From positions 133,858,001 through 133,922,000 of the forward strand of contig NC_091290.1 of assembly GCF_032444005.1 (NCBI RefSeq): a stretch of 64,000 nucleotides of DNA, read 5' to 3'. Shown here piece after piece: positions 3,455-56,600 of this stretch. Position 1 is the first letter of the stretch, and every line of letters starts with the position of its first letter. This DNA comes from Ranitomeya imitator (taxonomy: Eukaryota). A program made the position numbers and the translations under genes. Under the pieces are notes generated by a model. The model was given only the letters and a program-made list of their open reading frames with translations. It searched no databases and was not told the DNA's origin.

Positions 3455-12890
<9,436 letters not shown>

Positions 12891-21082: not shown

Positions 21083-24000
21083 CTAAGGCTCAGACACTGC
21101 AGACACGATCTGTGTATCCTCGTTATTGTTCATTTTCGCATTCTCTATGGATGGTTGAGATTTCTCCGGCTCGGCCTCAAGTGCGGGAAGGATTTCGGGC
21201 TCCTTTTGAGGCAATATACCCTCCAAGGCTTCATGCAGTGGAATCTTATTGATAGAACCCAGACTGCTGTAACGGGAGAGGTGAGTGGGGGCGACACCTG
21301 AGAGGGTAAAAAAAGATCAAAACTAAAATATCACACTACATAAACATATTACAGATCCTGAGTTACATCCTGTATTATACCCCAGAGCTGCACTCACTAT
21401 TCTGCTGGTGCAGTCACTGTGTACATACATTACATTACTGATCCTGAGTTACATCCTGTATTATACCCCAGAGCTGCACTCACTATTCTGCTGGTGCAGT
21501 CACTGTGTACATACATTACATTACTGATCCTGAGTTACATCCTGTATTATACCCCAGAGCTGCACTCACTATTCTGCTGGTGCAGTCCTGTGTACATACA
21601 TTACATTACTGATACTGAGTTACATCCTGTATTATACCCCAGAGCTGCACTCACTATTCTGCTTGTGCAGTCACTGTGTAAATACATTGTTCATCTTTCA
21701 CTGAATCTAACTTCTAAACTGTATTATGCTCCAGTGCTAAAGTCAAACTCTTGCTGGTTTCTATTGGAAACAGTCAGCAAGATTGTTGATTATATTTCAT
21801 TCAGCTTTGCGCTAACATTTAGCATGTTACCTGCTATTCCACATTCTGGCAGAATTCATTTTCTTCTATTTATAATTAGATGACAATAATTCTTTTCACT
21901 ACATCCATCTCTGTACTCACACTGAATAAGCAGGTCGTGCAGCCAGAGATCAGCTCATCTCCCTACAGAATTGTGAATACTGCTCCGCAGGTAAATAGGA
22001 CAGAACCTAAGTTGTACTATACAATCGACAGCTATTTCCTAACAACAATTTTTTTTTTTTGTACCAAGTATCTGTGCTCTCTGTGCTGGAGGAAAGAGGA
22101 CCTGCAAGCAGCGGTTCAGATACGGGGTCAGGTCCTCCAGGAAGACAGTGCAGAATTGGATAAAGAGTTCACGTTCCTGGGGGCTAAACGCAGCTTCCTC
22201 GGCTCGGTGGAACGTCAGGATAGATTTAACAACCTACGAAGGAGACAAAAGAAAAAACAACATGAAAGGTGCTGCATAATTACAACCACCAGTATGCACC
22301 AACTGGTGAAAAATAGTAGTTTTGCAACAGCTGAAGATCGCCAGGTTCTCTTGACAGTTCTTGTGACTCACTGCCTTATTCTCTGACTTGGCTGTTGACA
22401 GATCCAACCAGTTCCCACAAGATCAGGAAACAGTATGTTTATGGGAAAATCCATACAATCAAGAGCGATCACTTCTGCAAAAAATTAAAGTCACTGATGT
22501 ACCTTTTCCAACGCATCCTGCAACGTGTTGGTCACTTCTTCAGTTAACACCACAGGACAGCAAAGTCTCAGGTCATTGAAGGCCACCAGGATGTTGTTAA
22601 GAAAGCAGGCTAAGGGCGGGAAGTCCAGGAGAACCATAGGAGGCTGTAGGGTCCCCGGCTGGGCAGGCGGTGTTGGCACCGGTGGGATACTTGACCCGAG
22701 AACGGCGGTGGTGGAGATCAGCGTATACATGTTCATCTCCTCCTGGAACTTCTCCACTGCCTCCTTTGCTGCCCGTGCAAAGTTCTCGGCAGCCACCCTC
22801 TGGAATATGGGCGCCAGCTGCCCACGGAAATCAGCGCCCACGCGGCTGAACGAGAGTCCAAAATACATGCACTGCCCTAAAAGAGAGTCCAGACGACTGC
22901 CCACCCCTCTCTGAAGATCACTTTCTAGCACCTGCAGGAACTCGCTCACTTTCTGCAACACCCATCCGTGGAATATGGCGCCTTCACTGATGGGCAAGGA
23001 GCCTGCAGGAGAAGGAGGGAGGAGAAGGGGGTCTTCATCGGAGAAGATGGCCCGGTACTGGGTGATGACATCAAAGAGGTGCACGCGGCAGCTCTCAATG
23101 GTCTTGGTGAGATGGAAATAAGGGTCGTCTTGAGGGATGGAGCTCTGCATGGAGCGGAGCCAGGCATCCCGAGCCTGCAGGAACTTTATCCGTAACTCTG
23201 CTTCAGTGAAGACGTCCATCCTGCGCAGGAAGCTGATCACCCGCAGGCAGGCGGGCAGCTGGATGTTACTGCGCAGCTGCTGGAGGAGCTGGGTCAGCAT
23301 CAACTGGGCAGACTGGCGGACCTCGCTCACTATGCCCTGCAGAGAAGGGGCACACACCGCAGAAGAGAGGCAGAAAGTTATGTTCTGTTTACAAGACTTA
23401 ACATAACCATTTACTAGTGAACAGATAGAATACATGCAGGAGGTTGGCACTCGCACCTGGATGACAGGGATCGACGAGAACTTCTTCTCCAGCCGCTTCA
23501 CGTAGGCCGCCAGCTCCAGCGCCTCCTCGTAGTACCCATTCCGGACACACGTGTCCATCAGCTGCGGGATCTCCAGGATTTCTAGGATCTCGGTGTGGCG
23601 GTTCAGAGTCAGCGTGTTCATCCGCCGGCTGGAGCTGATCTCCTCCGCCTGCTTCACAAACCCCCTGCGGAGAAGAGTCTGATCATGTAAGGTTCAAAGG
23701 AGGAGAAGAGAAAGAATGCAGGGAAGATTGGAATACTAGTGACTCACACAACAACAGAGGGTGGGAGTAGTAGTGACACAGGGGAGGACAGGAGAAGTGG
23801 TGGCACAAGTGATGGCACCAGGGTGACGGGAGCACTAATAACAAAACTGAGCAGCAGGGACACGGGGGACGGGAGCAGGGACAGGTGACAATAGAATGAC
23901 TGTATTAAGCGACAGCAGGAGGATGAGAGGAGCAGCGACAGGGGACAGCAGGAGGATGAGAGGAGCGGCGACAGGAGGAGGATGAGAGGAGCGGCGACAG

Positions 24001-26784
24001 GAGGAGGATGAGAGGAGCGGCGACGAGACAGCAGGAAGATGAGAGGAGCGGCGACAGGGGACAGCAGGAGGATGAGAGGAGCGGCCACAGCAGGAGGATG
24101 AGAGGAGCGGCCACAGCAGGAGGATGAGAGGAGCGGCCACAGCAGGAGGATGAGAGGAGCGGCCACCGCAGGAGGATGAGAGGAGCGGCCACCGCAGGAG
24201 GATGAGAGGAGCCGCCACAGCAGGAGGATGAGAGGAGCCGCCACAGCAGGAGGATGAGAGGAGCAGCGATAGGGAACAGCAGGACGATGAGAGGAGCAGC
24301 GACAGCAGGAGGATGAGAGGAGCGGCCACAGCAGGAGGATGAGAGGAGCGGCCACAGCAGGAGGATGAGAGGAGCGGCCACCGCAGGAGGATGAGAAGAG
24401 CAGCCACAGCAGGAGGATGAGAGGAGCAGCCACAGCAGGAGGATGAGAGGAGCAGCCACAGCAGGAGGATGAGAGGAGCAGCCACAGCAGGAGGATGAGA
24501 GGAGCAGCCACAGCAGGAGGATGAGAGGAGCAGCCACAGCAGGAGGATGAGAGGAGCAGCCACAGCAGGAGGATGAGAGGAGCAGCCACAGCAGGAGGAT
24601 GAGAGGAGCAGCCACAGCAGGAGGATGAGAGGAGCAGCCACAGCAGGAGGATGAGAGGAGCAGCCACAGCAGGAGGATGAGAGGAGCAGCCACAGCAGGA
24701 GGATGAGAGGAGCAGCCACAGCAGGAGGATGAGAGGAGCAGCCACAGCAGGAGGATGAGAGGAGCAGCCACAGCAGGAGGATGAGAGGAGCAGCCACAGC
24801 AGGAGGATGAGAGGAGCAGCCACAGCAGGAGGATGAGAAGAGCAGCCACAGCAGGAGGATGAGAGGAGCAGCCACAGCAGGAGGATGAGAGGAGCAGCCA
24901 CGAGGAGCAGCCACAGCAGGAGCATGAGAGGAGAAGCCACAGCAGGAGGATGAGAGGAGAAGCCACAGCAGGAGGATGAGAGGAGAAGCCACAGCAGGAG
25001 GATGAGAGGAGAAGCCACAGCAGGAGGATGAGAGAAGCAGCGATAGGGAACAGCAGGACGATGAGAGGAGCAGCGACAGCAGGAGGATGAGAGGAGCAGT
25101 GATAGGGGACAGCAGGACGATGAGAGGAGCAGCGATAGGAGACAGCAAGACGAGAGGAGCAGCGACAGCAGGAGGATGAGAGGAGCAGCGATAGGGGACA
25201 GCAGAAGGATGAGAGGAGCAGCGATAGGGGAGAGCAGGAGGATGAGAGGAAATCAATAGGGGGCAGTAGGAGGATGAGAGGAGCAGTGATAGGGGACAGC
25301 AGGAGGATGAGAGGAGCAGCGATAGGGGACAGCAGGAGGATGAGAGGAAATCAATAGGGGGCAGTAGGAGGATGAGAGGAGCAGCGATAGGGGACAGCAG
25401 GAGGATGAGAGGGTTAGTGACAACAGGAGGATGAGAGGAGCAGCGATAGGGGACAGCAGGAGGAGAGGAGCAGCGATAGGGGACAGCAGGAGGATGAGAG
25501 GAGTAGTGATGGGTGACAGCAGGAGGATAAGAGGAGTAGTGATGGGTGACAGCAGGAGGATGAGAGGAGCAGTGATGGGTGACAGCAGGAGGATGAGAGG
25601 AGCAGCGGGGTGATGGGAGGAGTGGTCGCCCGGTGACAGCGGGGTGATGGGAGGAGTGGTCGCCCGGTGACAGCGGGGTGATGGGAGGAGTGGTCGCCCG
25701 GTGACAGCGGGGTGATGGGAGGAGTGGTCGCCCGGTGACAGCGGGGTGATGGGAGGAGTGGTCGCCCGGTGACAGCGGGGTGATGGGAGGAGTGGTCGCC
25801 CGGTGACAGCGGGGTGATGGGAGGAGTGGTCGCCCGGTGACAGCGGGGTGATGGGAGGAGTGGTCGCCCGATGACAGCGGGGTGATGGGAGGAGTAGTCG
25901 CCCGGTGACAGCGGGGTGATGGGAGGAGTAGTCGCCCGGTGACAGCGGGGTGATGGGAGGAGTAGTCGCCCGGTGACAGCGGGGTGATGGGAGGAGTAGT
26001 CGCCCGGTGACAGCGGGGTGATGGGAGGAGTAGTCGCCCGGTGACAGCGGGGTGATGGGAGGAGTAGTCGCCCGGTGACAGCGGGGTGATGGGAGGAGTA
26101 GTCGCCCGGTGACAGCGGGGTGATGGGAGGAGTAGTCGCCCGGTGACAGCGGGGTGATGGGAGGAGTAGTCGCCCGGTGACAGCGGGGTGATGGGAGGAG
26201 TAGTCGTCCGGTGACAGCGGGGTGATGGGAGGAGTAGTCGCCCGGTGACAGCGGGGTGATGGGAGGAGTAGTCGCCCGGTGACAGCGGGGTGATGGGAGG
26301 AGTAGTCGCCCGGTGACAGCGGGGTGATGGGAGGAGTAGTCGCCCGGTGACAGCGGGGTGATGGGAGGAGTAGTCGCCCGGTGACAGCGGGGTGATGGGA
26401 GGAGTAGTCGCCCGGTGACAGCGGGGTGATGGGAGAAGTAGTCGCCGGTGACCTGCAGCTCTCCTGGAGGCCGGGCAGTTTGCCCAGTAGCCGGGACACG
26501 TTGTTCTCCACTTGGCTGAAGTCCCGGTAGATGAGCTCGGTGCACTCCGCCGTGCGGATGAACGTCTTGTAGTGAGTGAACGCCAGGTCCCGGGTCTGCT
26601 GCAGGATCTGCGCCCGCTCCTCCGCCAGCCTCTCCGGCTCCCTCCGCAGCTTCTCCACCCCGAAGGAGCTGAGCTCCAGCAGATAAGCGGCGAAATCCGG
26701 GCTGTCCCTCCAACTCTCCGGGAAACTGTTCCTGAACACCGAGGCCAGCAGGCTCTCATCTTCCTCCACGTCCACCGCCGCCAT
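21083..26784 (-). CDS. COG8: Conserved oligomeric Golgi complex subunit 8 (585 aa, 5 exons)
   Basis: complement(join(21083-21297,22065-22233,22503-23336,23457-23664,26453-26784)), total 1758 nt, phases consistent. Hallmark segments LRREPERLAEERAQILQQTRDLAF, LEILEIPQLMDTCVRNGYYEEALEL, CMYFGLSFSRVGADFRGQL. Confidence 0.96.
21345..21690. repeat. 86-bp dispersed satellite unit, ~4 copies (COG8 intron 4)
   Basis: Unit TCACTGTGTACATACATTACATTACTGATCCTGAGTTACATCCTGTATTATACCCCAGAGCTGCACTCACTATTCTGCTGGTGCAG; same family as 53775-54965. Confidence 0.93.
23915..25602. repeat. 26-bp purine-rich minisatellite with variant sub-arrays, COG8 intron 1
   Basis: Core unit GAGGATGAGAGGAGCAGCCACAGCAG; 26-aa periodicity in the minus-strand ORFs. 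Confidence 0.93.
25603..26452. repeat. 34-bp CpG-rich minisatellite (~25 copies) starting at the COG8 intron 1 donor
   Basis: Unit GGTGACAGCGGGGTGATGGGAGGAGTAGTCGCCC; 34-aa periodicity. Confidence 0.95.
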
Positions 26785-37400: not shown

Positions 37401-40400
37401 TCGACTTAATGTTCCCTTTGAGCATCCGATAAAATAATAAAATGACATGTTTGGAATATAGGTCATCATGTGACTTTACAGTTTTCTCAGCCTCCATTCA
37501 GACTGGTCAGGTTCTCTCTAAAATCAACCCCAGACCTGGCGGGTAATAAGACGCGTGAAGTGCTTACAAGATTTTTCTTTTCTTCCTTGTGATGGGTGAG
37601 CTGAACAAGCTCCGGACAGGATCATTGCTGCGCTTGGGCTCCTCCTGGCTGCGCTTGGGCTCCTCCTGGCTGCGCTTGGGCTCCTCCTGGCTGCGCTTGG
37701 GCTCCTCCTGGCCGCGCTTGGGCTCCTCCTGGCCGCGCTTGGGCTCCTCCTGGCCGCGCTTGGGCTCCTCCTGGCCGCGCTTGGGCTCCTCCTGGCCGCG
37801 CTTGGGCTCCTCCTGGCCGCGCTTGGGCTCCTCCTGGCTGCGCTTGGGCTCCTCCTCGTTGCGCTTCGGCTCCTCCTCGTTGCGCTTCGGCTCCTCCTCC
37901 CTGCGCTTCGGCTCCTCCTCGCTGACGGTCTCCACTTTAACTTCCTCCTCTTCGTTTTCCTGCTGACTGTCCTGTTCCGTCACCAACTGGTGGAGAGACA
38001 CCAAACACCTCCGCTGTGCCATCTCCTGTATGATGGACGCCTCCTCTCTGGGGGAGCAAGCACGGGGGCTCTTATTGGTTTGCCTTTCAGGAGAGACCCT
38101 TTGTAGACAGGCGTCTCCCCTACAGAAGTCTGTCTCACAGAGGTGTCTGAATGTTACATCGGGGTTGTCATCTTGACAGAGTAATAAGAACTTAGATCTT
38201 ATGGCAGACAGGCTGCACGAGGGGCCGCGGTCTACGTCCGACCTGGAGGGACGAGAAGGACATACAGCTCATCAGTCCCCATTCTGTGCCTCACTAGACG
38301 GAGAGGACATCAACCAAACCAAGACAAACCTGGCTGCTTTCTTCTGTCCATGCTGCAATACCACGCACCACCTGTACACAAGGGTGGCGCCGTCTAGTAT
38401 AGAAAGCAGCCATGTTTCTCAACCCCTTTAACTATACAAGAACTCACTGAGAAGAGCTCAACCTTGATCTTAAACCCATTCCTGACAAAATGGCTACATT
38501 AGGGGCCCCCGAATACTCCAGGGTTATTCAGTCACTGTACGTACCCAGCTTCCTTTCCTTGGCTGGTGCCTTCATTGCTGTGTGATGCTGCAGTCAGACC
38601 ATGGGGTGCGGTGGTCTCGTCTTCGGGGGATGTATTTCCCAGGCTCGGCTCACGGTTTGTCTCTGGGTCGGTATCTTCCTCGGACTCTTCCTTCAGTTCT
38701 AGAAACTCTTCTTGTGCAAGCTTAAAAAAAAAAAAACAAAAAAAAAAGCACAGTGTGAATGCGGCTTTACGCCATCTCTTGCTGAGCAATTATTCCTCCC
38801 GGATCATAGAGTGACGGACCGCCGACACTTACGGTCAGTAGGAAGGAGGGAATTCTCTGGATCTTGCTCTCGAACAGGTCGTAAATCTTTTCTTTGATGG
38901 TAGACAAGGAAAAATTTGCGATCAGCGGATGCTTGACGTTCCTCTCCTGGATGATGTGCAGCAGATCCGCCCACAGCTGCTAAAAGAAGACAGACGAAAA
39001 TCTGCGCAACAGAGATGTGAAAAGTGGCCAATCCCAGGAGCAACACTCAGCTTATATCCATGGCTCCTGACAGATCCCCTCCCCCGAGGATCCGGGTGAA
39101 GCGGGCGGCCAGTACTCACTTGTGTATTTCGGCTCTTAGAAATGTACTTCGTCAGGATTTTGTTGGCTTTCTCAAACCGCTGCTTCTGTATACAGGTGAC
39201 CACGGCCTGGAAAAGAGCAACACATGAGTATCCGATGTGACACAGGACGGGCGGCCATACTCTGCGAGCACCGAGTCCGCAGCCGCGTCTTTAGGGGCCA
39301 CTTACTTACCAGCTCCTAAAAACTAGCAGGGGGACGGTGCTGTAAGAAGTAGAGGACAGAAGCGGTTTATAAATGCTTCTGTCTTCTAAGGGCTCGTGCA
39401 CGGGACCGATCTTCTCCAACGAGTGGTGTCTGTGGTTTTCATAGACTGCACTCGTACCTATGATATTCTACAGAGCTGCGGACATGTCAGATTTTTTCCC
39501 AGGTTGATTAATCAGCAGAAAAAAAAATTGGAGACCATGTTTGATTTTGATCTGAGTGTCAGATCAAAATTGACAATGCAAGTCTATGGGTCAGTGAAAA
39601 AAATAAATAAAAAAAAATAATAATTGGGACAGGAGTGCGCCGGACAGGACTGCGCGGGACAGGACTACGCCGGACAGGACTGCGGCCAGACAGGACTACG
39701 CCGGACAGGTGATAAAGAGGTTGTCCAAAGAAAACAAGTTAAGTCACTATAAGACTATTTGTTTTGCACACTCCCCCCAAAAAAATAAAAAATACCCCTT
39801 ACCGCCTCTTTCAGCATTTGCTTGTTGGCATTGATGAGATCCGCAGGGAACGACTTCTTCATCGTGTCCATGACTCTGACAGCTGATTCCAGCGGCGTGT
39901 AGCTCTCGTCTTCATCAAACGTACAGTCTGAGGATACAGGAAGAATCATTGGCTTATAGCGATCCTCACCAGGACGTACCGGGTCGGTGCCAAATCCCTC
40001 CTGCGCAGTTCCCAGGGGCGGCGAGCGGATCACCAGAAAAGTGCTGGACAAGGAACAATGACCCTGAAAGGTGAGGAGCAAGGGCCGCATTACTTACCGA
40101 GATCGTCCCCTTCTTCCACGCAGGAGAAGAGCTGCATGATGCGCAGAAGTTGTGTGTTCTCCTTCGCACTTTTTAAACGTCGCTGGATTAAAACTATTTT
40201 GAAAAAAAAAAATGGGATGAAATAAGAGACAGAAGCGCGACCGACGACATTTATGTGATTCGCTATTTTAAAGCTGAATGATTGTTAGCCCCAACTACAT
40301 GTATTTAAGTAAGAAAAACAAAAATGGCCCCAAAAGGAACCACCCCTTTAATTATGGGGGATGGAAAAAAAGGCATTATGGGAAATCCCGAGCGCTATCG

Positions 40401-41633
40401 GAGCACTTTAGCCCCTTAGATGCCACAGTCAAATGAAACCGCAGCATTTAAGGGGGATAGAAATGGAGGAAAGTGTCTCTTCTGACAGGGGGGCCAATGG
40501 CGTTATCATTATGGCCCCTGGATTAATTGAAGACCACCTGGATCTGCCTTATTTTTACACCTAAGATTGGTAATTTTACAAGACAGTGCGAAATTACAGA
40601 TAACAAAAACAATGTATTTTTTAAATAACATTCTTTTGACGCCTCTCACCATCTGTTCCAAGAACGCAAAAATAATAATACTTAAAAAAAAAAAGTAAAA
40701 TAATCTTGTAATAGTGCGCCACCTGCTGGCGACTTTCAGTAAATAAATAACATCCTGTAATAGTGCGCCACCTGCTGGCGACTTTCAGCAAATAAATAAC
40801 ATCCTGTAATAGTGCGCCACCTGCTGGCGACTTTCAGTAAATAAATAACATCCTGTAATAGTGCGCCACCTGCTGGCGACTTTCAGCAAATAAATAACAT
40901 CCTGTAATGGTGCGCCACCTGCTGGCGACTTTCAGTAAATAAATAACATCCTGTAATAGTGCGCCACCTGCTGGCGACTTTCAGTAAATAAATAACATCC
41001 TGCAATAGTGCGCCACCTGCTGGGGCCTTCGAGTGTAGCAGTTACCCGCTCCTTACGCGACACGATGTCCCGGATCTGTGCGAAGTCCTCCTTACGGCAG
41101 TTTTTGAAGGCGTCCACGTACAGATGGAAAAAGTATTCCAACACCCACTGGTTTACCAGAGGCTCCAGTCTTAGCAGGTTGCAGTCCTCGGTGCCCAACT
41201 CCATCCTGCACCCTATTAGTAAAAAAATAAGTAATTCTGCCGCGAAATGGCCCCACTTCCGGTGATGCTGTCATGTGACTTGGATGTTGACGTCGGCCAT
41301 GATGGGAAGGGCGGAAGTTGTGATTTTTATTATTATTATTTTCGCTTTTTTACGTGTAAAAATGTGCACATAATGAGATGCAAGCAGTTGCTGTATTAGA
41401 TTAGATTAGAGATACAGTTTTCGGTTCCCACATCAAACATGGCTGCTTTTTTCTTTTTTATATGTCTATTCTAATTGGTTGGTGGCCTGAGAGAACCGGC
41501 GCTAGTGATTGGATGACTGTTTTGCGAGCATCCCGCCTTTCTGAAGGCGATTGGTTGTCACCTTGGAGACCTCACCTGTGTCCATGAGCCGAGTGTCTGA
41601 GGCGTCGCTGCTACGGAAGCCGGGGGTCGTCAT
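34456..41633 (-). CDS. TERF2: Telomeric repeat-binding factor 2 (600 aa from ATG 41633, or 578 aa from ATG 41204)
   Basis: complement(join(34456-34614,36155-36192,36531-36616,37568-38242,38545-38720,38833-38979,39120-39206,39803-39927,40098-40193,41057-41212,41576-41633)), total 1803 nt, phases consistent. TRFH domain ([11 protein letters not shown]..., TPLESAV), RAP1-binding-like LSAIRSKF..., [10 protein letters not shown], Myb domain [22 protein letters not shown]...[12 protein letters not shown]. The first exon 41576-41633 is less certain (~0.55). Confidence 0.92.
35242..36056. mobile_element. MITE with internal ~90-bp inverted repeat, TERF2 last intron
   Basis: Ends GGCAGTCTCACACGTC...GACGTGTGAAACCGGCC flanked by TAA. 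Internal arms ~35400-35490 and ~35660-35750 are reverse complements. Confidence 0.7.
37627..37920 (-). repeat. Coding 21-bp tandem repeat, 14 copies, in TERF2 exon
   Basis: Unit CAG GAG GAG CCC AAG CGC (A/G)GC on the minus strand, encoding (Q/E)EEPKR(S/G/N/R) x14 in frame. Confidence 0.95.
40709..41024. repeat. 49-bp tandem array (6 full units plus a partial 7th) carrying CTCF and forkhead motifs
   Basis: Unit TAATAGTGCGCCACCTGCTGGCGACTTTCAGTAAATAAATAACATCCTG; the core CGCCACCTGCTGG starts at 40717 + 49n (n=0-6). Confidence 0.93.
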
Positions 41634-41668
41634 ATCAGTAGTTACGTAACGCGGTTTACACACCGGCA
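41634..41668. promoter_or_regulatory. TERF2/CYB5B divergent spacer with perfect PAR-bZIP palindrome
   Basis: GTTACGTAAC at 41641-41650. Reverse-CCAAT boxes (ATTGG) lie at ~41475, ~41508 and ~41550 upstream of CYB5B. Confidence 0.65.
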
Positions 41669-44600
41669 ATGGCGAACGGTGAAGGCGGCTCCAGCGAGGA
41701 GTCTGAGGCGACTTACTACAGCCTGGAAGATGTGAGGAAAAGAAACAGCGCGAAAGAGCTATGGCTGGTGATCCACGGCCGGGTGTACGACATCACACGC
41801 TTTGTGGAAGAGGTGAGGACCGGACGGCGACGGTGACTGAGGCGGGGGCGTCTGTGCGGCTTCACCCGGGGGAAAGAAGAGTGACCGTGATGTGTGCGAC
41901 TGTATCTGCACTAGAGGCGTTACAGCAGAGGAGAGCGTCCCCGGTATAATGGGGCGTCCCCGGTATATGGCCGGTATAATGGGGCGTCCCCGGTATATGG
42001 CCGGTATAATGGGGCGTCCCCGGTATATGGCCGGTATAATGGGGTGTCCCCGGTATATGGCCGGTCTCCGGTATAATGGGGCGTCCCCGGTATATGGCCG
42101 GTATAATGGGGCGTCCCCGGTATAATGGGGCGTCCCCGGTATAATGGGGCGTCCCCGGTATAATGGGGCGTCCCCGGTATAATGGGGCGTCCCCGGTATA
42201 TGGCCGGTATAATGGGGCGTCCCCGGTATATGGCCGGTATAATGGGGCGTCCCCGGTATATGGCCGGTATAATGGGGCGTCCCCGGTATATGGCCGGTCC
42301 CCGGTATAATGGGGCGTCCCCGGTATATGGCCGGTCTCCGGTATAATGGGGCGTCCCCGGTATATGGCCGGTCTCCGGTATAATGGGGCGTCCCCGGTAT
42401 ATGGCCGGTCCCCGGTATAATGGGGCGTCCCCGGTATAATGGGGCGTCCCCGGTATATGGCCGGTCTCCGGTATAATGGGGCGTCCCCGGTATATGGCCA
42501 GTCTCCACTGTAATGGGGCGTCCCCGGTATATGGCCGGTTTCCACTATAATGGGGCGTCCCCGGTATATGGCCGGTCTCCGGTATAATGGGGCGTCCCCG
42601 GTATATGGCCAGTCTCCACTGTAATGGGGCGTCCCCGGTATATGGCCGGTTTCCACTATAATGGGGCGTCCCCGGTATATGGCCGGTCTCCGGTATAATG
42701 GGGCGTCCCCGGTATATGGCCAGTCTCCACTGTAATGGGGCGTCCCCGGTATATGGCCGGTTTCCACTATAATGGGGCGTCCCCGGTATATGGCCGGTTT
42801 CCACTGTAATGGGGCGTCCCCGGTATATGGCCGGTTTCCACTGTAATGGGGCGTCCCCGGTATATGGCCGGTTTCCACTGTAATGGGGCGTCCCCGGTAT
42901 ATGGCCGGTTTCCACTATGTGAAAGAGGATCTGTTACCAGAAAGATCCTAATTACATATGTAGGGGCGGCTGGAATACTGTGTCCGGTTTTGGGCACCAC
43001 ATTTAAAAAAAAAAATGCATCAACAAAGTGTAGTAAGTTCAGAGAAGAGCCACCAGGATGGTGACCGGTCTGCAAACCATGTCCTGTGAAGAACGGTTAC
43101 AGGATCTGGGAATGTTTAGCTTGCAAAAAAGGAGACTTACTATGTGTCTACAAATATCTCTAGGGCTGTCACATTGTAGAAGGATGATCTTTATTCTCAT
43201 TTGCACAATGAAAGACTACAACCCCTGGCAATAATTATGGAATCGCCGGCCTTGGAGGATGTTCATTCAGTTGTTTAATTTTGTAGAAAAAAATCATATC
43301 ACAGACATGGCACAAAACTACAGTCATTACAAATGGCACTTTCTGGCTTTAAGAAACACCAAAAGAAATCAAGAACATAAATGTGGTAGTCAGTGATGGT
43401 TACTTTTTTTTAACCAAGCATTGATAAAAAATTATAGAGTCATGAAAAACAAACAAACAAAAAAACCCTTCAACACATCACTAGTATTTTGTTGCACCAC
43501 CTCTGGCTTTTCTAACAGCTTGCAGTCTCTGAGGTCTGGACTTAATGAGTGTCACACAGGACTCTCCATCAATCTGGCTCCAACTTTCTCTGATTGCTGT
43601 TGCCAGATCAGCTTTGCAGGTTGGATTCCTGTCATGGACCATTTTCTTCAACTTCCATCAAAGATTTTCCATTGGATTGAGATCCGGACTATTTGCAGCC
43701 ATGACATTGACCTTATGTGTCTATTTTCAAGGAATTTTTTCACAGTTTTTGCTCTATAGCAGGATGCATTATCATCTTGAAAAATGATTTCATCATCCCC
43801 AAACATCCCTTCAATTGATGGGATAAGAAAAGTGTCCAAAATATCAACATAAACTTGTGCATTTACTGAAGATGTAATGGCAGCCATCTCCCCAGTGCCT
43901 TTACCTGACATGCAGCCCCATATCATCAATGACTGTGGAAATTTGCATGTTCTCGTCAGGCAGTCATCTTTATAAATCTCATTGGAACGGCACCAAACAA
44001 AACTTCCAGCATCATCACCTTGCCCAATGCAGATTCGCGATTAATCACTGAATATGACTTTCATCCAGTCATCCACAGTCCACGATTGCTTTTCCTTAGC
44101 CCATTGTAACCTTTTTCTGTTTAGGTGTTAATGATGGCTTTCGCTTAGCTTTCCTGTATGTAAATCCCATTTCCTTCAGGCGGTTTCTTACAGTTCGGTC
44201 ACAGACGTTGACTCCAGTTTCCTCCCATTCGTTCCTCATTTGTTTTGTTGTGCATTTCCTGTTTTGGAGACATATTGCTTTAAGTTTCCTGTCTTGAAGC
44301 TTTGATGTCTTCCTTGGTCTACCAGTATGTTTGCCTTTAACAACATTCCCATGTTGTTTGTATTTGGTCCAGATTTTAGACACAGCTGACTGTGAACAAC
44401 CAACATCTTTTGCAACATTGCGTGATGATTTACCCTCTTGTAAGAGTTTGATAATCCTCTCCTTTGTTTCAATTGACATCTCTCGTGTTGGAACCATGAT
44501 TCATGTCAGTCCACTTGGTGCAACAGCTCTCCGAGGTGTGATCACTCCTTTTTAGATGCAGACTAGCGAGCAGATCTTATTTGATGCAGGTGTTATTTTT

Positions 44601-47600: not shown

Positions 47601-50600
47601 CTGCACTAGAAATATGAAAAACTAAGAGCGTTTAGCGTATAAATTGGCCAATTCATGTGTACCTGGTAGCCACATTAGGGCAACCCTCGTATACCAGGTC
47701 CTAAATTTGCATTCACTAGCCTTCTGACTGAGCACTCCGCCTCTTAGCCACAGGTGTTTTAATCGCAGCAGGACCATTACCCCTGCGCAGAGAGAAATTT
47801 AGTCTGAGGATTCACAGTAGGTTCCCATTCAGATGAAGACTTTTATTCTCAGCGAGGAAAGGAAAGTTTAGGACCTGGTATACGAGAGATGCCTTAATGT
47901 GTCTACCAGGTACACATGAATTGGCCAATTTATGCGCTAAACGCTCTAATTTTTTTCATATTTCTAGTGCAGTAATGCAGTTCAATTTTCACGTTTGTTT
48001 GTTTTAGCGCCGCAGTGTGCTGCCTTATTTAACCATAACACCCAAACAGCGCGCCTGCTGCTGGGGTGTTATTATGGTGCCGCCCACGGAGAAGGAATTG
48101 TCAGCCTCAGACAATAAAAGTGACAACCCCCTTCAATCACCTAATTGCCATGGTTCTTGAGGTGGGGCCCCCTGATCTAACGTTGATGATTTTTATGGGC
48201 CATTAATTTTTAAAGCCCCTTTTTAACATTGTCCTATTGAAACGATCGATTCGTGACTTACCGGTAACCTCTACTGAACAATAATGAAAACTTGCATTTT
48301 TGGAGATAATGGCGCCATTTGTGAGCCCAAGTATCATGGTTTACCGGTGGCATTACATGCTCCATTTTTGTAGACTGGGGTATATAGGTAAAGCAGAACA
48401 CATGATGGCTCCTGGCCGGACGTGCCCTCGTGTTTGCGGAGTACATGGTTCTATTGCAGCTTTTTGTATGCTTCTGCCCGTATGACTGGAGGTAAATATA
48501 TTTCTTTTCTCCGGGTGTTGGTATATGGTCATATTTAGGTGAAGCTTACTTCATATTGATTTCCTCTGCTTCCGTGACTGCTGTTTGGCTAGCTTTTGCC
48601 CATTAGAACTGACATAGTGGGCACAGGTGGGTCAGATGTCATGTGCCCGGTCTCCGATCTGCTGATTGACAGGTGAGGCTGACAGAAGGACTGTTGCCAT
48701 TGTTACTGTAGTTCTAAGCTTGCCTCCCAACATTTGCAGATATAAAGGGATGGCTGCAGGTATGTGAACTAAATACTGTATGTTGGCCCCCGTGTCTCTG
48801 CTACAGTGCCTGCCATCCCTAAATCATTTCATTTAACCTCTTCATCTGTTCATGCCATATTCACATGGAGGTCAGGCCTGGACCCACTGCTGATCTGATC
48901 CCCAGAGCTAGCCGAATTGTAGGTCTGGGATGATCAGATCAGAAAAGTGCCCGTGTTATGACACTTTTCGACAACTGCAGCTTTTCTGTTATCAAATAGT
49001 AACTTGAAGGATCAAAGGTTGCAGCTCTCGTGCATTATCACTATTGTGCGCTGGCAGTTTTCAGCCTCTTGGATCATGATAAAAGCCGTGTGCCTGACGA
49101 GCGGACTGTCAGCTGTGCTCACTGGTGTCCGGTATCCCGACTTCTTGATTAAATGATCAGAGATTTTGTTGTTTGGTGTGAAAATTACACACTCCATTAA
49201 ACCAATCAAAATTTATTTAAAGGGCATCTGCACATTTTGCATGCTAGATGCAGTCTAGGCTACTTAAACAAGCTCTCATATCAAAGTCTGTATCTTCTTA
49301 ATATTTTGCAGTCATCATATTATATAACGCTGTGTACTTTCAATTACTCATTTTGCCTTTCTACCAGCTAGTTTTTCTTTTCTCTGATCTATGTGGAAAT
49401 TTGATGTCCTGTCACTGCAGAAATCATTCCCCTCTTCAACTTCTGCCCCAATTCTCCATCCATACCCCCTGCCCTGTTCCTGCCTGGGAATTTTGCAGTG
49501 ACTTAATGAGTCATCAGGGAAAATTTCTACATAGAACTTAGAAGGAATCAGCTAGTCAGTTTTTAATTACGTGATGTCATAGACCTTACGGAAAAGAGAA
49601 GAATTATCTTGGTAGAAAGACAAAATGAGCAATTGTAAGTACACAGTGCTATATAATATGATGACTGCAAAATATTAAGAGGATACAGTTTTGTTGGGAG
49701 GAGCAGTGCTTCTTTAATATTCCAAAGGCCACAATTTTCTTATTTTTTTCCATTGATGAATCTCTTAAGGGCTCGTGGGTTGTTTTTTTTGTTTGTTTTT
49801 TTTCTTTTATAATTTTGATTTTCTTTCAGATTTCTCTTGTGCTCACACTCATCATCTACCCTTTTTTCCCTCCTCCTTTTCCGTATTTTACACCCCCTTT
49901 TGGCCCCCACTACCTCATCTTCCTCCCCCTTGGCTACTTCTAAGCCCATTTTTTTTTTATTTTCTCCCTCACTTGAGCCTGTAATGGGCCCAGTCCACTA
50001 CTCCCCAGTCGGCCTTACTTGCCTCTTCAGCCCTTTCGACTTCTCCTGCGCTCCACCACAAACAACCCCTCCATCGTACAACTCTTGGATGAACATAATA
50101 TTCCACTTTATGGTGTTCACAAACCTCCTAATAAAATGCGGAATAATCAGGTGCCCGGCGTGCCAATGTCTCCACCAGTCGACATGTTACCCCTTAGGAC
50201 TATATGCATTACACGTGGCATGCCATTCTCAACAGTCACCACATGAGGGCGCTGTGAGCCTGTCATCTCATTGACAGCCATTTTCCGCACTTGGCACGCG
50301 TTTTTTACCCATGGAATAGTAAAATGCCCAAAGGGAGGGAGGACTGCTGCTTTCCACATGGGGTGAAAAGTTCGTCATGCCATGCCCCGTATCTCACATT
50401 CACACAGCAGTAAATTTTGTGCCTGCGCAACAGACCTCTTGTGACATTAATTAAAGAGATGACACTACAAAACCGAGCCCCGCGTGCCCTGAGCTGCGTT
50501 ATTCTGTTCAGACCTTCTCATTATGAACCTATTATTGGGGTGTGGTACATCAGGCGGTGCTATTGTGTGCGCAAATTGTTATTTACTCGGCCGTGCTTCT

Positions 50601-53600: not shown

Positions 53601-56600
53601 ATAAGTTCTCACCGCGGGTGCTGAAAGGAAAACACCAATTACAGGAAATAACTTATTATCTGTGCTTCATTTACTGTAATGATGTGATCAGCTCTGGAAA
53701 AAAATCTGCACCATTCCACTCCTCATAGCTGCGGTATAGTGAATGATCTCCCTATATACCCAGTGTTAGAACTTAAGTTACAGCCTGTTTTATACTCCAG
53801 AGCTGCGCTCACTATTCTGCTGGTGCAGTCACTGTGTACATACATTATATTACTTATCCTGAGTTACATGCTGTATTATACTCCAGAGCTGCACTCACTA
53901 TTCTGCTGGTGCAGTCACTGTGTACATAAATTACATTACCGATCCTGAGTTACATCCTGTATTATACCCCAGAGCTGCACTCACTATTCTGCTGGTGCAG
54001 TCACTGTGTACATACATTACATTACTGATCCTGAGTTACATGCTGTAATGCTGTATTATACCCCAGAGCTGCACTCACTATTCTGCTGGTGCAGTCACTG
54101 TGTACATACATTACATTATTGATCCTGAGTTACATCCTGTATTATACCCCAGAGCTGCACTCACTATTCTGCTGGTGCAGTCACTGTGTACATACATTAC
54201 ATTACTGATCCTGAGTTACATCCTGTATTATACTCCAGAGCTGCACTCACTATTCTGCTGGTGCAGTCAGTGTACATACATTACATTACTGATCCTGAGT
54301 TACATCCTGTATTATACTCCAGAGCTGCACTCACTATTCTGCTGGTGCAGTCACCGTGTATATACATTACATTACTGATCCTGAGTTACATCCAGTATTA
54401 TACCCCAGAGCTGCACTCACTATTCTGCTGGTGCAGTCACTGTGCACATAAATTACATTACTGATCCTGAGTTACATCCTGTATTATAATCCAGAGCTGC
54501 ACTCACTATTCTGCTGGTGCAGTCACTGTGTACATACATTACATTACTGATCCTGAGTTACATCCTGTATTATACCCCAGAGCTGCACTCACTATTCTGC
54601 TGGTGCAGTCACTGTGTACATACATTACATTACTGATCCTGAGTTACATCCTGTATTATACTCCAGAGCTGCACTCACTATTCTGCTGGTGCAGTCACTG
54701 TGTACATACATTACATTACTGATCCTGAGTTACATCCTGTATTATACTCCAGAGCTGCACTCACTATTCTGCTGGTGCAGTCACCGTGTATATACATTAC
54801 ATTACTGATCCTGAGTTACATCCAGTATTATACTCCAGAGCTGCACTCACTATTCTGCTGGTGCAGTCACTGTGTACATACATTACATTACTGATCCTGA
54901 GTTACATCCTGTATTATACCCCAGAGCTGCACTCACTATTCTGCTGGTGCAGTCAGTGTGTACATATATTTGGTACCTGGGCAGTAGGTACTGTAGGCTC
55001 ATCCATATCGTGCCCTTCTGCTGTATGGGGCACAGCTTTTAACCATTCTGATCTAATTGAGCAGAATCTACCAAGAAGCCTCATTAAGGTCCACAATTAA
55101 CTCTGGGAAAGTAATGGGGAGGGGTGACTGGTAGAACCTGATGCTGGAGCCTGGGGGAACGTGTAAGGAATGCTTTCTGTTCCTGGCACTGGGAGATGTG
55201 TATCCTGTGCGGTGTTGAAATATCTCGTCAATGAATGGATTATTATGGATGGTTTTATATTAGGTAAACGTGATTATTAATTACCCCTGTAATTATTAGG
55301 TCTACAACCTGTAATTAAATAACATTGTTACTATGGCTTCTCTACAGTTATCAAAGATTAGAAAAACATCAATTTCTTTTTTTTTCAACAGCGCCTCTCG
55401 TACATGGGCGCTTACTGGTATTTTAGCTCCAACCTGATTGGGTAAGATCTGCGATACCGGACAGTCTAGTAACGTTATGGCCCCAGCTTAATGGAAATGT
55501 TGGGGTGTTAGGAGAGTGATCCTAAATTCCGGTTTGTCACTCCATCCTGTGCACCAGGCTACTTGAAGAGACTTCATTATGGTTCTTCTGCTTGTCTCCC
55601 CAGCATCCAGGAGGAGAGGAAGTCCTGTTCGAACAGGCCGGCGCCGATGCTACCGAGAGCTTTGAAGATGTCGGCCATTCTGTGGATGCACGGGAGATGC
55701 TGAAGCAGTATTACGTAGGAGATCTGCATCCGGTAAGATTGTTATTACACATTATGGTATAAAGTGTTTTGTTTTCTTTACCCAATCACTAATGCCACTT
55801 ATGGCTTGGGTACTTCCAATTTATTAAAAAAAAAAAAAAAAAAAAAATATGGCCACTCGGATGATCGACCCCCCCCCCTAAAAAAAAAAAAAAAAATGCA
55901 GCACGATCACATTGTGTGATCATACCCTGATGGTACAAGACCAAGAAGAAGCCACTAAAGACACTTTGGAAAAACCACGGTGTTCACGTCACATCAATGC
56001 CGGTTTCACACCAAGTACGGATTGCAATGCACCGATTGGCGAACGCCGCAGCCTTATATTACGCCTACGGGGCTGATGTGTTTGGAACCATATTTGTGAA
56101 ACCAGCCGAAGGCTATGTGCACATGTTGGGATTTCCTGCGGATCCGCTGCGTTTTTTGCGGTGCCGAAATGCTGCAGATCAGCAAGTGATTTACAGGACA
56201 GTGTAAATCAATGTGAAAAAAAAAGCTGTGCTGATGGTGCGGAAAATTCAGTGCGGAAACGCTGCTGATTAAAAGAAGTAGCATGTCACTACATTTTTGC
56301 GGATCTGCAGCGTGTTTGTACCCATTCCATTATAGAAATCCGCAGGGGTAAAAAAACGCAGCAAAACCACACAAAAAACGATTTTCTGCCAAGAGATGCA
56401 GAATCCGCACCAGAAATTCCTAAGCCTAATCTGCAACGTGTGCACATAGCCTAAAGCCGTGTTCAAACAATGCGTTATTGCAGCTTTTTTTATTTTAATG
56501 CTAATTTTCAGCTGCGTTTCACAGTTCCAGCTAAGTTAGAGATTTCAGAAATCTGAAAGCAATGTGTAGTGCACAAATACTGCAAAAAACGCATGTATCA

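What the first reader, a model, noticed from the sequence alone, without database searches (positions are those of the whole stretch)
40709..41024. Tandem array of seven co-oriented CTCF motifs interleaved with forkhead sites
Seen: each 49-bp unit has GTGCGCCACCTGCTGGC, whose reverse complement GCCAGCAGGTGGCGC fits the CTCF core CCASYAGRKGGCRS. Each full unit also has GTAAATAAATAA or GCAAATAAATAA (forkhead RYAAAYA). The array starts ~35 bp inside the TERF2 intron and ~600 bp from the TERF2/CYB5B promoter. Established: clustered co-oriented CTCF sites make strong directional loop-extrusion barriers. Inference: a minisatellite-amplified insulator pointing toward the VPS4A-TERF2 housekeeping cluster, separating it from the TE-rich CYB5B side, with strength set by copy number. 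This is the best candidate here for an undescribed regulatory device.
Basis: partly seen in the sequence, partly recalled or inferred. Interest (0 to 1): 0.8.

Follow-up and report, generated by a model that had tools for sequence, protein, structure and literature searches.

The report
CTCF-site minisatellite in frog TERF2 intron
A single CTCF binding motif at the start of the first TERF2 intron, which two other frog families also carry, has been copied head-to-tail into seven same-direction motifs 49 bases apart in this poison-frog lineage; this gives a natural series of 1, about 7 and about 17 copies for testing whether more CTCF sites make a stronger chromatin anchor, though no binding or function has been shown.

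Summary
A 49-bp x 6.6 minisatellite lies at 40703-41023, plus a diverged proto-unit reaching 41045. It carries seven exact CTCF cores (CCAGCAGGTGGCGC), all on the TERF2 sense (minus) strand, scoring 21.5 of 27 bits. These are the only such matches in 64 kb.

Read depth shows the unit is locus-specific and not a dispersed repeat. This differs from another CTCF array of this genome, which an earlier follow-up (s1-288135) traced to a transposon. This scan holds about 50 notes on CTCF-motif arrays elsewhere in the same genome.

A sister species carries the array at the same place with about 16-18 unit equivalents. Engystomops and Rhinoderma carry one sense-oriented CTCF motif 24-42 bp into the same intron. 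That motif sits in the only conserved block of the intron. Mixophyes and Nanorana have degenerate versions, and Leptodactylus has none.

My best reading is that an ancestral promoter-proximal CTCF site was amplified by the minisatellite-generating process that is very active in this region (13 arrays in 64 kb). It probably binds several CTCF molecules. Whether copy number tunes insulation is untested.

The forkhead motifs carry too little information to count. The array also lies between alternative TERF2 splice sites.

Verdict: a new variant of a known kind, of moderate interest.

The parts
40703..41023 (-). 49-bp minisatellite, 6.6 copies. The consensus on the TERF2 sense strand begins CCAGCAGGTGGCGCACTATTACAGGATG.
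   Evidence: TRF score 607 with 97% matches; register table
40997..41045 (-). Diverged proto-unit (38 of 49 to the consensus) next to the exon. It carries the seventh CTCF motif and ends at the alternative GT donor.
40695..40713 (-). Degenerate partial unit at the far end of the array (GTAAAATAATCTTGTAATA), without a CTCF core. It is followed by a T-run and the acceptor of a candidate mini-exon.
   Evidence: read directly
40714..40732 (-). CTCF motif 7, counted from the exon: TCGCCAGCAGGTGGCGCAC, 21.5 bits
40763..40781 (-). CTCF motif 6, 21.5 bits
40812..40830 (-). CTCF motif 5, 21.5 bits
40861..40879 (-). CTCF motif 4, 21.5 bits
40910..40928 (-). CTCF motif 3, 21.5 bits
40959..40977 (-). CTCF motif 2, 21.5 bits
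41008..41026 (-). CTCF motif 1 in the proto-unit: GCCCCAGCAGGTGGCGCAC, 16.0 bits. It is the positional counterpart of the single site in Engystomops and Rhinoderma.
41057..41204 (-). Coding part of the first coding exon of TERF2 (ATG at 41204, canonical donor C|GTAAGG at 41056/41055). An alternative donor G|GTAACT lies at 41045/41044.
   Evidence: N-terminus identical to Ranitomeya imitator TERF2 isoforms
40650..40680 (-). Candidate 31-nt mini-exon ([10 protein letters not shown]) used by one published gene model together with the alternative donor. The intron between them (41045 to 40681) is almost entirely the array.
   Evidence: P0159 sequence, ORF text, sequence
41226..41668 (.). TERF2/CYB5B divergent promoter region. 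CpG observed/expected is about 0.7-1.25 from 40600 to 42100.
   Evidence: (RNA contig colinear to 41226)

Best explanation
This is a young, lineage-specific minisatellite (VNTR). It arose by tandem duplication of a 49-bp piece that contained a pre-existing, evolutionarily conserved CTCF site. That site sits just inside the first TERF2 intron, in the sense orientation, a few hundred bases downstream of the TERF2/CYB5B divergent promoter.

Shown here:
- The array exists, and its seven motifs are strong.
- The unit is specific to this locus.
- The array is present in at least two further Ranitomeya species, with a different copy number in one (about 7 versus about 16-18).
- Two other hyloid families have a single positional counterpart of the site.

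Inferred:
- The amplification was produced by the unequal-exchange or slippage process that litters this region with minisatellites. Frogs lack PRDM9, and in them recombination and tandem repeats go together.
- The array binds several CTCF molecules side by side. The 30-bp linker lies within the 30-58 bp range at which mammalian double sites are co-occupied.
- It keeps doing what the ancestral single site did: acting as a promoter-proximal, leftward-pointing cohesin anchor for loops over the TERF2-VPS4A side.
- The extra copies are neutral or modestly strengthening rather than a purpose-built insulator.
For: Array and motifs. Chance: a random 49-bp unit reaches 21.5 bits with p of about 3e-6, so a genuine site was amplified.

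Locus-specific: in a DNA run of the same species (single-copy depth 10.7), the array contigs have depths of 85.7, 45.6 and 19, and per-bin sums of 66-77. That is about 7-8 unit equivalents. The neighbouring transposon fragment at 40277-40322 reaches 588, with dozens of different flanks.

Sister species: one contig joins the exon flank to the array end (40996-41313, 97% identity). Array depth of 155-171 over a single-copy depth of 9.6 gives about 16-18 units. Its three coding changes match R. variabilis TERF2. A third species has a 128-nt array contig with six differences; the four that are listed lie outside the cores.

Orthologues: there is a single sense-oriented motif at +24 in Engystomops (17.8 bits) and at +42 in Rhinoderma (15.5 bits). 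The 17-mer AGGGGGCGCTCTCTGAC is the only clearly significant shared block (E = 1.8e-4) between their 1.8-1.9 kb introns. Mixophyes and Nanorana have degenerate homologues. None of these introns has an array there.

Minisatellite-prone context: 13 arrays in 64 kb. Engystomops has an unrelated minisatellite on the CYB5B side. Recombination-driven tandem expansion in PRDM9-less frogs is described in PMC10794172.

Occupancy plausibility: the frog CTCF motif is the vertebrate one and is convergent at TAD borders (PMC8270788). Double footprints occur at motifs 30-58 bp apart and are enriched at active promoters (PMC4562119). CpG is not depleted over the array. The only core CpG is at position 12, where methylation hardly affects binding in vitro (PMC8084297).
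Against: There are no occupancy, cohesin, Hi-C or methylation data for this species. The window's site shares only position, orientation and motif-level similarity (11 of 14 core bases) with the Engystomops and Rhinoderma sites, and its flanks are unalignable, so independent origin is not excluded. Leptodactylus lacks the site, and Mixophyes and Nanorana score low. DNA of the closest outgroups (Dendrobates, Phyllobates, Anomaloglossus) could not be fetched, so the time of amplification is unknown. The depth of one array contig (85.7) is about twice what the four T-variant units of the assembly predict, so a longer second allele or a few extra copies elsewhere are possible. Seven CTCF molecules at 49-bp spacing have never been shown to co-bind.
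Confidence: 0.6

Rival explanations
1. This is the first reader's model: the amplification is adaptive. The array would be a copy-number-tuned, directional 'super-insulator' that walls off the TERF2-VPS4A housekeeping cluster from the CYB5B side.
For: There are seven co-oriented high-scoring motifs. The amplified copies score higher (21.5 bits) than the proto-unit and the orthologous single sites (15.5-17.8 bits). All cores are invariant while flank positions vary within and between species. Forward-oriented motifs at 50236, 52457 and 57856 give a divergent pattern around the promoter. Clustered CTCF sites strengthen boundaries in mammals (titles and abstracts of PMC9279147 and PMC6945661).
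Against: The copy number differs about twofold between sister species, as expected for a drifting VNTR. The window makes minisatellites of every kind. The site is promoter-proximal and intronic, which is the usual place of promoter-type double sites rather than of domain boundaries. With about ten variant positions the invariance of the cores is weak evidence (p about 0.03 if the positions were independent, which they are not). No convergent partner of 15 bits or more on the plus strand lies to the left within the window.
Confidence: 0.2
2. The array is an inert VNTR. The motifs are there but are not occupied, because of nucleosomes, methylation or steric exclusion, and the array has no regulatory effect.
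For: Many motif matches in repeats are unbound; for example, alpha-satellite CTCF motifs give no DiMeLo-seq signal in the human T2T study (bioRxiv 10.64898/2026.07.18.739380). The region is minisatellite-rich.
Against: The ancestral site is conserved across hyloid families in otherwise unalignable intron sequence. The array lies in a CpG-undepleted, promoter-proximal region. The motifs are near-optimal, and the core CpG is at the methylation-tolerant position.
Confidence: 0.12
3. The array acts at the RNA level or on splicing. It fills the intron between an alternative 5' splice site (41045) and a candidate 31-nt mini-exon (40650-40680). It could therefore influence the choice between the productive donor (41056) and the alternative one, directly or by CTCF-induced polymerase pausing.
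For: An RNA contig of a related species uses the 41046 junction and then meets a stop codon. One published gene model, P0159, uses the alternative donor plus the mini-exon, adding 42 nt in frame. The proto-unit ends exactly at the alternative donor.
Against: The array RNA has no significant structure (z = -1.5) and no Rfam match. The RefSeq isoforms use the canonical donor. Nothing links copy number to donor choice.
Confidence: 0.05
4. The unit is a fragment of a dispersed transposon or satellite family that happens to contain a CTCF-like motif. This was concluded for another array of this genome (s1-288135).
For: A 12-of-13 local match to the 86-bp repeat family of the window (3 of 300 shuffles score as well, before correcting for 8 tests). 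A 14-Mb run of a further organism holds an exact 79-nt array contig at depth 3.5.
Against: Array depth equals about 7-8 units at single-copy coverage, and no excess of diverged copies appears at 88% identity or more. There are no other matches in the window and no inverted repeats around the array. The site has positional orthologues in other frogs.
Confidence: 0.03

Closest known systems
Clustered double CTCF sites (2xCTSes) at active promoters and enhancers (Pugacheva et al. 2015, PMC4562119)
   Same: Two or more CTCF motifs sit 30-58 bp apart in one orientation. They are promoter-proximal and conserved, and are co-occupied by more than one CTCF molecule (double footprints).
   Different: This array has seven motifs made by a recent tandem duplication, with variable copy number. 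Occupancy is unknown. The BORIS partner of the mammalian sites arose in amniotes (abstract of PMC5973138), so it should be absent from frogs.
CTCF-binding macrosatellites and large VNTRs (DXZ4, FIRRE, ICCE, the 1q23.3 tRNA VNTR; PMC3491370, PMC6125249, PMC4041453)
   Same: Tandem arrays in which every unit carries a CTCF motif in one orientation. Copy number is variable, and the motif is conserved while the rest of the unit diverges.
   Different: Their units are kilobases long, against 49 bp here. Those arrays are large and often X-linked superloop anchors. This array is 0.35 kb, inside a promoter-proximal intron of an autosomal-type housekeeping gene.
Clustered CTCF boundaries of mammalian TADs (PMC9279147, PMC6945661, PMC10703910)
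   Same: Several co-oriented sites that could add up as a loop-extrusion barrier.
   Different: Natural clusters are spaced by hundreds of bases to kilobases and arose by independent site birth, not by minisatellite amplification. No boundary has been shown here.
Recombination-driven minisatellite expansions of frog genomes (Bredeson et al. 2024, PMC10794172)
   Same: Short units amplified in tandem-repeat-rich, recombination-prone regions, with different expansions in different frogs.
   Different: The described examples come from transposon fragments (SINE/tRNA-V and others). Here the seed is a conserved single-copy regulatory motif.
Transposon-borne CTCF site expansions (for example SINE B2 in rodents; from my own knowledge) and the transposon-seeded 79-copy array of this genome (s1-288135)
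   Same: Multiplication of CTCF motifs by a repeat process.
   Different: The unit here is not dispersed and has a positional orthologue in other species.

Membership tests
Vertebrate CTCF binding site | Match to the core motif CCASYAGRKGGCRS or the JASPAR MA0139-type matrix | tested here: met
   Seven exact IUPAC matches against 0.02 expected. Scores are 21.5 bits (six sites) and 16.0 bits (one site) of 27.1, with per-position p of 3e-8.
Vertebrate CTCF binding site | Evolutionary conservation of the site at an orthologous position | tested here: inconclusive
   There are single sense-oriented motifs at +24 in Engystomops and +42 in Rhinoderma, with a shared 17-mer. Mixophyes and Nanorana have degenerate versions, and Leptodactylus has none. 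The flanks of the window's site are unalignable, and the closest outgroups were not available.
Vertebrate CTCF binding site | Occupancy by CTCF in vivo (ChIP or footprint) | not testable with these tools
   No ChIP, CUT&RUN or footprint data could be reached.
Minisatellite / VNTR | Head-to-tail units of 10-100 bp at one locus | tested here: met
   Period of 49 bp, 6.6 copies, 97% matches. The depth fits one locus.
Minisatellite / VNTR | Variable copy number between individuals or close species | tested here: met
   About 7-8 unit equivalents in the window's species against about 16-18 in the sister species, measured by contig depth. Polymorphism within the species was not tested.
Clustered-CTCF domain boundary / insulator | Several co-oriented CTCF sites | tested here: met
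   Seven motifs, all on the minus strand.
Clustered-CTCF domain boundary / insulator | Cohesin stalling and contact insulation at the site | not testable with these tools
   No Hi-C, Micro-C or RAD21 data.
2xCTS class of promoter-associated double CTCF sites | Motifs 30-58 bp apart under one peak, near an active promoter | tested here: met
   The linker between 19-bp motifs is 30 bp. The array is 250-650 bp from the TERF2 and CYB5B starts. The spacing range is taken from PMC4562119.
2xCTS class of promoter-associated double CTCF sites | Double footprint or co-occupancy | not testable with these tools
   No footprint data.
CTCF macrosatellites (DXZ4 type) | Kilobase-scale repeat unit | tested here: not met
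   The unit is 49 bp.
Transposon-derived CTCF site family | The unit is part of a dispersed repeat present at many loci | tested here: not met
   Array depth is about 7-8 times single copy. The adjacent transposon fragment is about 55 times single copy, with many flanks. The window has no other copies.
Forkhead binding-site cluster | Motif occurrence beyond chance, or conservation | tested here: not met
   RYAAAYA occurs 119 times in 64 kb, 107 of them outside the array, or about one per 600 bp. The orthologous sites have no counterpart next to them.

The most novel reading that the evidence does not exclude
In frogs, which lack PRDM9 and make minisatellites near promoters very readily, tandem amplification of pre-existing CTCF sites may be a general, fast route of CTCF-site evolution, playing the role that transposon spread plays in mammals. 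At this locus the copy number (1 in other hyloids, about 7 here, about 17 in the sister species) would then act as a heritable dial on the strength of a promoter-proximal loop anchor, and so on TERF2/CYB5B regulation. The roughly 50 unchecked notes on CTCF-motif arrays in this same genome would be further instances.
Probability: 0.15. Interest if true: 0.75.

Novelty: new variant of a known kind. Interest (0 to 1): 0.45.

Why it matters
How the number and spacing of CTCF sites set the strength of a loop-extrusion barrier is an open quantitative question. So far it has mostly been addressed with engineered arrays. This locus offers a natural allelic and species series at one orthologous site: one motif in Engystomops and Rhinoderma, seven in the window's species, and about 17 in its sister species. 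The gene pair and promoter are the same throughout.

It also shows that some of the many CTCF-motif arrays flagged in this genome are not transposon-derived. At least this one grew out of a conserved single site. If occupancy and insulation scale with copy number, minisatellite dynamics would be a fast source of variation in three-dimensional genome structure. If they do not, the locus is a clean example of a strong motif array that is functionally silent.

Tried and rejected
- **Dispersed or transposon origin.** Rejected by read depth, by the absence of other copies in the window and by the absence of flanking inverted repeats.
- **Homology of the unit with the other twelve minisatellite units of the window.** Only a 12-of-13 match to the 86-bp family turned up (3 of 300 shuffles, 8 tests). 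I treat this as chance.
- **RNA gene or structured RNA.** There is no Rfam match in the array. The only hits are a sub-threshold mir-8791 hit in the neighbouring satellite and two bacterial sRNA hits with E of about 0.4-0.9. Folding gives z = -1.5.
- **Forkhead sites as a second signal.** The motif is too common to count.
- **Word-based protein search with the first TERF2 exon.** It found nothing.
- **Fetching the closest outgroup loci.** Anomaloglossus, Phyllobates, an older Ranitomeya imitator assembly and Rana temporaria gave no DNA because the files are too large. The Dendrobates and Pseudophryne isoforms are not on record.
- **Literature.** Four searches for CTCF-motif minisatellites in amphibians, or at minisatellite scale, found no description.
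- **Search of this scan's notes by sequence.** Nothing found.
- **An upstream (zinc finger 9-11) CTCF motif.** I did not score it, because I have no reliable matrix for it.
Full report
**1. What is there**

The stretch 40703-41023 is a tandem array with a 49-bp period, 6.6 copies and 97% matches. The word GTGCGCCACCTGCTGGC occurs six times exactly and once with one mismatch, and nowhere else in the 64 kb. The degenerate CTCF core CCASYAGRKGGCRS matches seven times, always as CCAGCAGGTGGCGC on the minus strand, against 0.02 matches expected from shuffles.

I scored the window with a count matrix of the JASPAR MA0139.1 type. Six sites score 21.5 bits and the seventh 16.0, out of a maximum of 27.1. 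They are the best sites in the window; the next are 18.3 bits at 3575 and 15.7 at 50236.

In register there are six near-identical units (48-49 of 49). A seventh unit at 40997-41045 matches the consensus at 38 of 49 positions. A random 49-bp unit would reach 21.5 bits with a probability of about 3e-6. The motif is therefore not an accident of repeat composition: a genuine site was multiplied.

**2. Gene context**

The array lies on the sense strand of TERF2, which runs on the minus strand. The first coding exon starts at ATG 41204. Its N-terminus, MELGTEDC...DIVS|LLIQRR, is identical to the RefSeq TERF2 isoforms of Ranitomeya imitator. The window therefore most likely comes from that species or a very close relative (inference).

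The productive donor is C|GTAAGG at 41056/41055, and the next exon starts at 40193. The intron is thus about 860 nt, and the array fills 38% of it. The first CTCF core ends 33 nt from the donor.

A second donor, G|GTAACT at 41045/41044, coincides exactly with the end of the proto-unit. An RNA contig of a related species joins 41046 to 40193, which gives a premature stop. An older R. imitator gene model, P0159, combines this donor with a 31-nt mini-exon at 40650-40680, adding 42 nt in frame. In that isoform the intron is almost entirely the array.

The TERF2 5' end is at or beyond 41226 according to the RNA contig. It is at or beyond 41274 by homology with a Dendrobates model. P0159 also uses an upstream exon near 41580-41640. 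CYB5B starts at 41669 on the other strand. CpG observed/expected stays near 0.8-1.2 from 40600 to 42100, array included.

**3. Not a dispersed repeat**

I laid the contigs of a DNA run of the same species on 40200-41500. The single-copy depth is 10.7. The array contigs have depths of 85.7, 45.6 and 19, and the bins sum to 66-77, which is about 7-8 unit equivalents. This is the same order as the 6.6 copies in the assembly. The 85.7 value is about twice what the four T-variant units predict, so a longer second allele or a few extra copies cannot be excluded.

The contrast is the 46-bp stretch at 40277-40322. It reaches depth 588, with dozens of different flanking sequences, as a transposon fragment should. 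The unit has no other copy in the window and no flanking inverted repeats. Its only similarity to the other minisatellite units is a 12-of-13 match.

This differs from another CTCF array of the same genome, which an earlier follow-up in this scan (s1-288135) traced to a dispersed hairpin repeat.

**4. Close relatives**

In a DNA run of a second organism, one contig runs from the exon flank into the array end (40996-41313, 97% identity). The changes at 41198, 41192 and 41179 reproduce the L3M, T5A and N9S differences of R. variabilis TERF2. The array contigs of that run sum to 155-171 over a single-copy depth of 9.6, or about 16-18 unit equivalents.

A third organism, seen in an RNA run, has a 128-nt array contig with six differences. 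The four that are listed fall outside the two cores it spans.

The array is therefore shared by at least three species of the genus and varies in copy number. The cores are invariant in everything I saw, while the flank positions vary. With about ten variant positions this is only weak evidence of constraint.

**5. Distant relatives**

A profile-free search with the Myb exon, followed by a word search, identified frog TERF2 proteins. Through these I fetched five orthologous loci.

| Species | Best CTCF-like match near the start of the intron | Score (bits) |
|---|---|---|
| Engystomops pustulosus | single sense-oriented motif 24 nt into the intron | 17.8 |
| Rhinoderma darwinii | single sense-oriented motif 42 nt into the intron | 15.5 |
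| Mixophyes fleayi | homologous block with one extra G | 6.8 |
| Nanorana parkeri | only the G-rich half | 1.3 |
| Leptodactylus fuscus | nothing | none |

The 17-mer AGGGGGCGCTCTCTGAC, which covers the 3' half of the motif and the eight bases after it, is the only clearly significant shared block (E = 1.8e-4) between the 1.8 and 1.9 kb introns of Engystomops and Rhinoderma. None of the five introns has a tandem array there.

The window's proto-unit site lies 31 nt into the intron in the same orientation, and shares 11 of 14 core bases with those sites. Its flanks cannot be aligned. A sense-oriented site of 15 bits or more within the first 150 nt of an intron is expected with a probability of about 4e-4 per species (derived). 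Three of six species having one therefore means shared ancestry or shared selection.

DNA of the closest outgroups could not be fetched.

**6. How it most likely arose and works**

The window holds 13 distinct minisatellite arrays in 64 kb. The CYB5B side of the same promoter carries an unrelated minisatellite both here (41941-42918) and in Engystomops. In frogs, which lack PRDM9, recombination is concentrated in tandem-repeat-rich regions, and unequal exchange is thought to drive such expansions (PMC10794172). The simplest origin is that this process happened to seed on a 49-bp piece containing the conserved CTCF site.

A rough estimate supports this. The window has two or three strong sites per 64 kb outside the array, and about 13 arrays. 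Random capture would then give a strong CTCF motif to about 0.3% of arrays. That is the same order as the roughly 50 arrays noted by first readers in 754 windows of this genome. Those notes are unchecked and the estimate is crude.

As to function:
- The frog CTCF motif is the vertebrate one and is convergent at Xenopus TAD borders (PMC8270788).
- In mammals, motifs 30-58 bp apart give double footprints and mark active promoters (PMC4562119). The linker here is 30 bp.
- The only CpG in the core is at position 12, where methylation hardly affects binding in vitro, unlike position 2 (PMC8084297).

I therefore expect the array to be bound, probably by several molecules. I expect it to act as the ancestral site did, as a promoter-proximal anchor. 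Its motif points toward lower coordinates, that is, the TERF2 body and beyond. This follows the convergent-motif convention, which I apply from my own knowledge. Whether seven copies do more than one is open.

**7. Rivals**

The twofold copy-number difference between sister species looks like drift.
- An unoccupied, inert VNTR is possible. Motif-rich human satellites can lack CTCF signal.
- A splicing role is suggested only by the position between alternative splice sites. The RNA has no significant structure (z = -1.5) and no Rfam match.
- A transposon origin is largely refuted.
- The forkhead motif RYAAAYA occurs once per 600 bp in this window and has no counterpart next to the orthologous sites, so it carries no weight.

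**8. Comparison with what is known**

Tandem arrays with one CTCF motif per unit are known at kilobase scale (DXZ4, FIRRE, ICCE, the 1q23.3 tRNA VNTR). They are also known in human gamma-satellite and rDNA. Clustered sites at boundaries and double sites at promoters are well described.

Four literature searches turned up no description of a minisatellite-scale array grown out of a conserved single site with species-specific copy number. I therefore rate it a new variant of a known kind. Its interest is moderate: the sequence evidence is clean and the orthologue series is useful, but nothing is known about binding or effect.

Noticed in passing
window 41040-41060, 40650-40680 and 40193: TERF2 has two 5' splice sites 11 nt apart. 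The 41056 donor is productive. The 41045 donor, joined directly to the next exon, gives CGG TTT TAA, a premature stop, and an RNA contig of a related species uses exactly that junction. Gene model P0159 rescues the frame with a 31-nt mini-exon ([10 protein letters not shown]). This may be unproductive or alternative splicing of a shelterin gene.
   Followed up: partly
The RefSeq isoforms do not use it, and neither does the RNA contig that runs colinear through 41205 to 41226. A Dendrobates model starts colinear at the equivalent of 41274. TERF2 probably has more than one start site.
   Followed up: partly
whole window: Minisatellite density is very high: 13 distinct arrays in 64 kb, at 4716, 5713, 5865, 10170, 10549, 21348, 23908-26452, 37627 (coding), 39627, 40703, 41941-42918, 44936 and 53776.
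   Followed up: partly
window 5865-6782: A 28-bp x 33 array in which each unit carries a weak CTCF-like word (AGGGCAGAAGATGGCAAGA, 9.3 bits) on the minus strand. This is far below the TERF2 array and probably meaningless.
   Followed up: partly
window 21348-21688 and 53776-54970: The same 86-bp tandem repeat family occurs twice in the window (4 and 14 copies), so it is a dispersed tandem-repeat-bearing element.
   Followed up: no
window 40277-40322: A 46-bp piece inside the same intron is a high-copy dispersed repeat. Its depth is about 55 times single copy in two species, with many different flanks.
   Followed up: partly
L002:39-57, L002:655-673 and L002:73-1708: In Engystomops the CYB5B side of the shared promoter holds a 26/52-bp minisatellite of about 1.6 kb, with two identical 22.8-bit CTCF motifs 616 bp apart. 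The promoter flank is a recurrent minisatellite site in different frogs, with unrelated units.
   Followed up: no
L001:2430-2502: Nanorana has two strong CTCF motifs in opposite orientation 54 bp apart (21.7 and 16.7 bits, both TGGCCACTAGATG...), about 700 bp upstream of the TERF2 exon end. This may be a small inverted-repeat element.
   Followed up: no
window 40805-40883 (run X25): A run of only 14 million letters from a further organism holds an exact 79-nt array contig at depth 3.5. This is odd for a single-locus sequence and could mean targeted data or a higher copy number in that organism.
   Followed up: no
The repeat number differs between the two R. imitator protein models (P0157, P0159).
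   Followed up: partly
window 42126-42195: A sub-threshold Rfam match to mir-8791 (31.7 bits against a gathering score of 85) inside the 37-bp satellite of CYB5B intron 1. It is most likely a chance match from the palindromic repeat.
   Followed up: no
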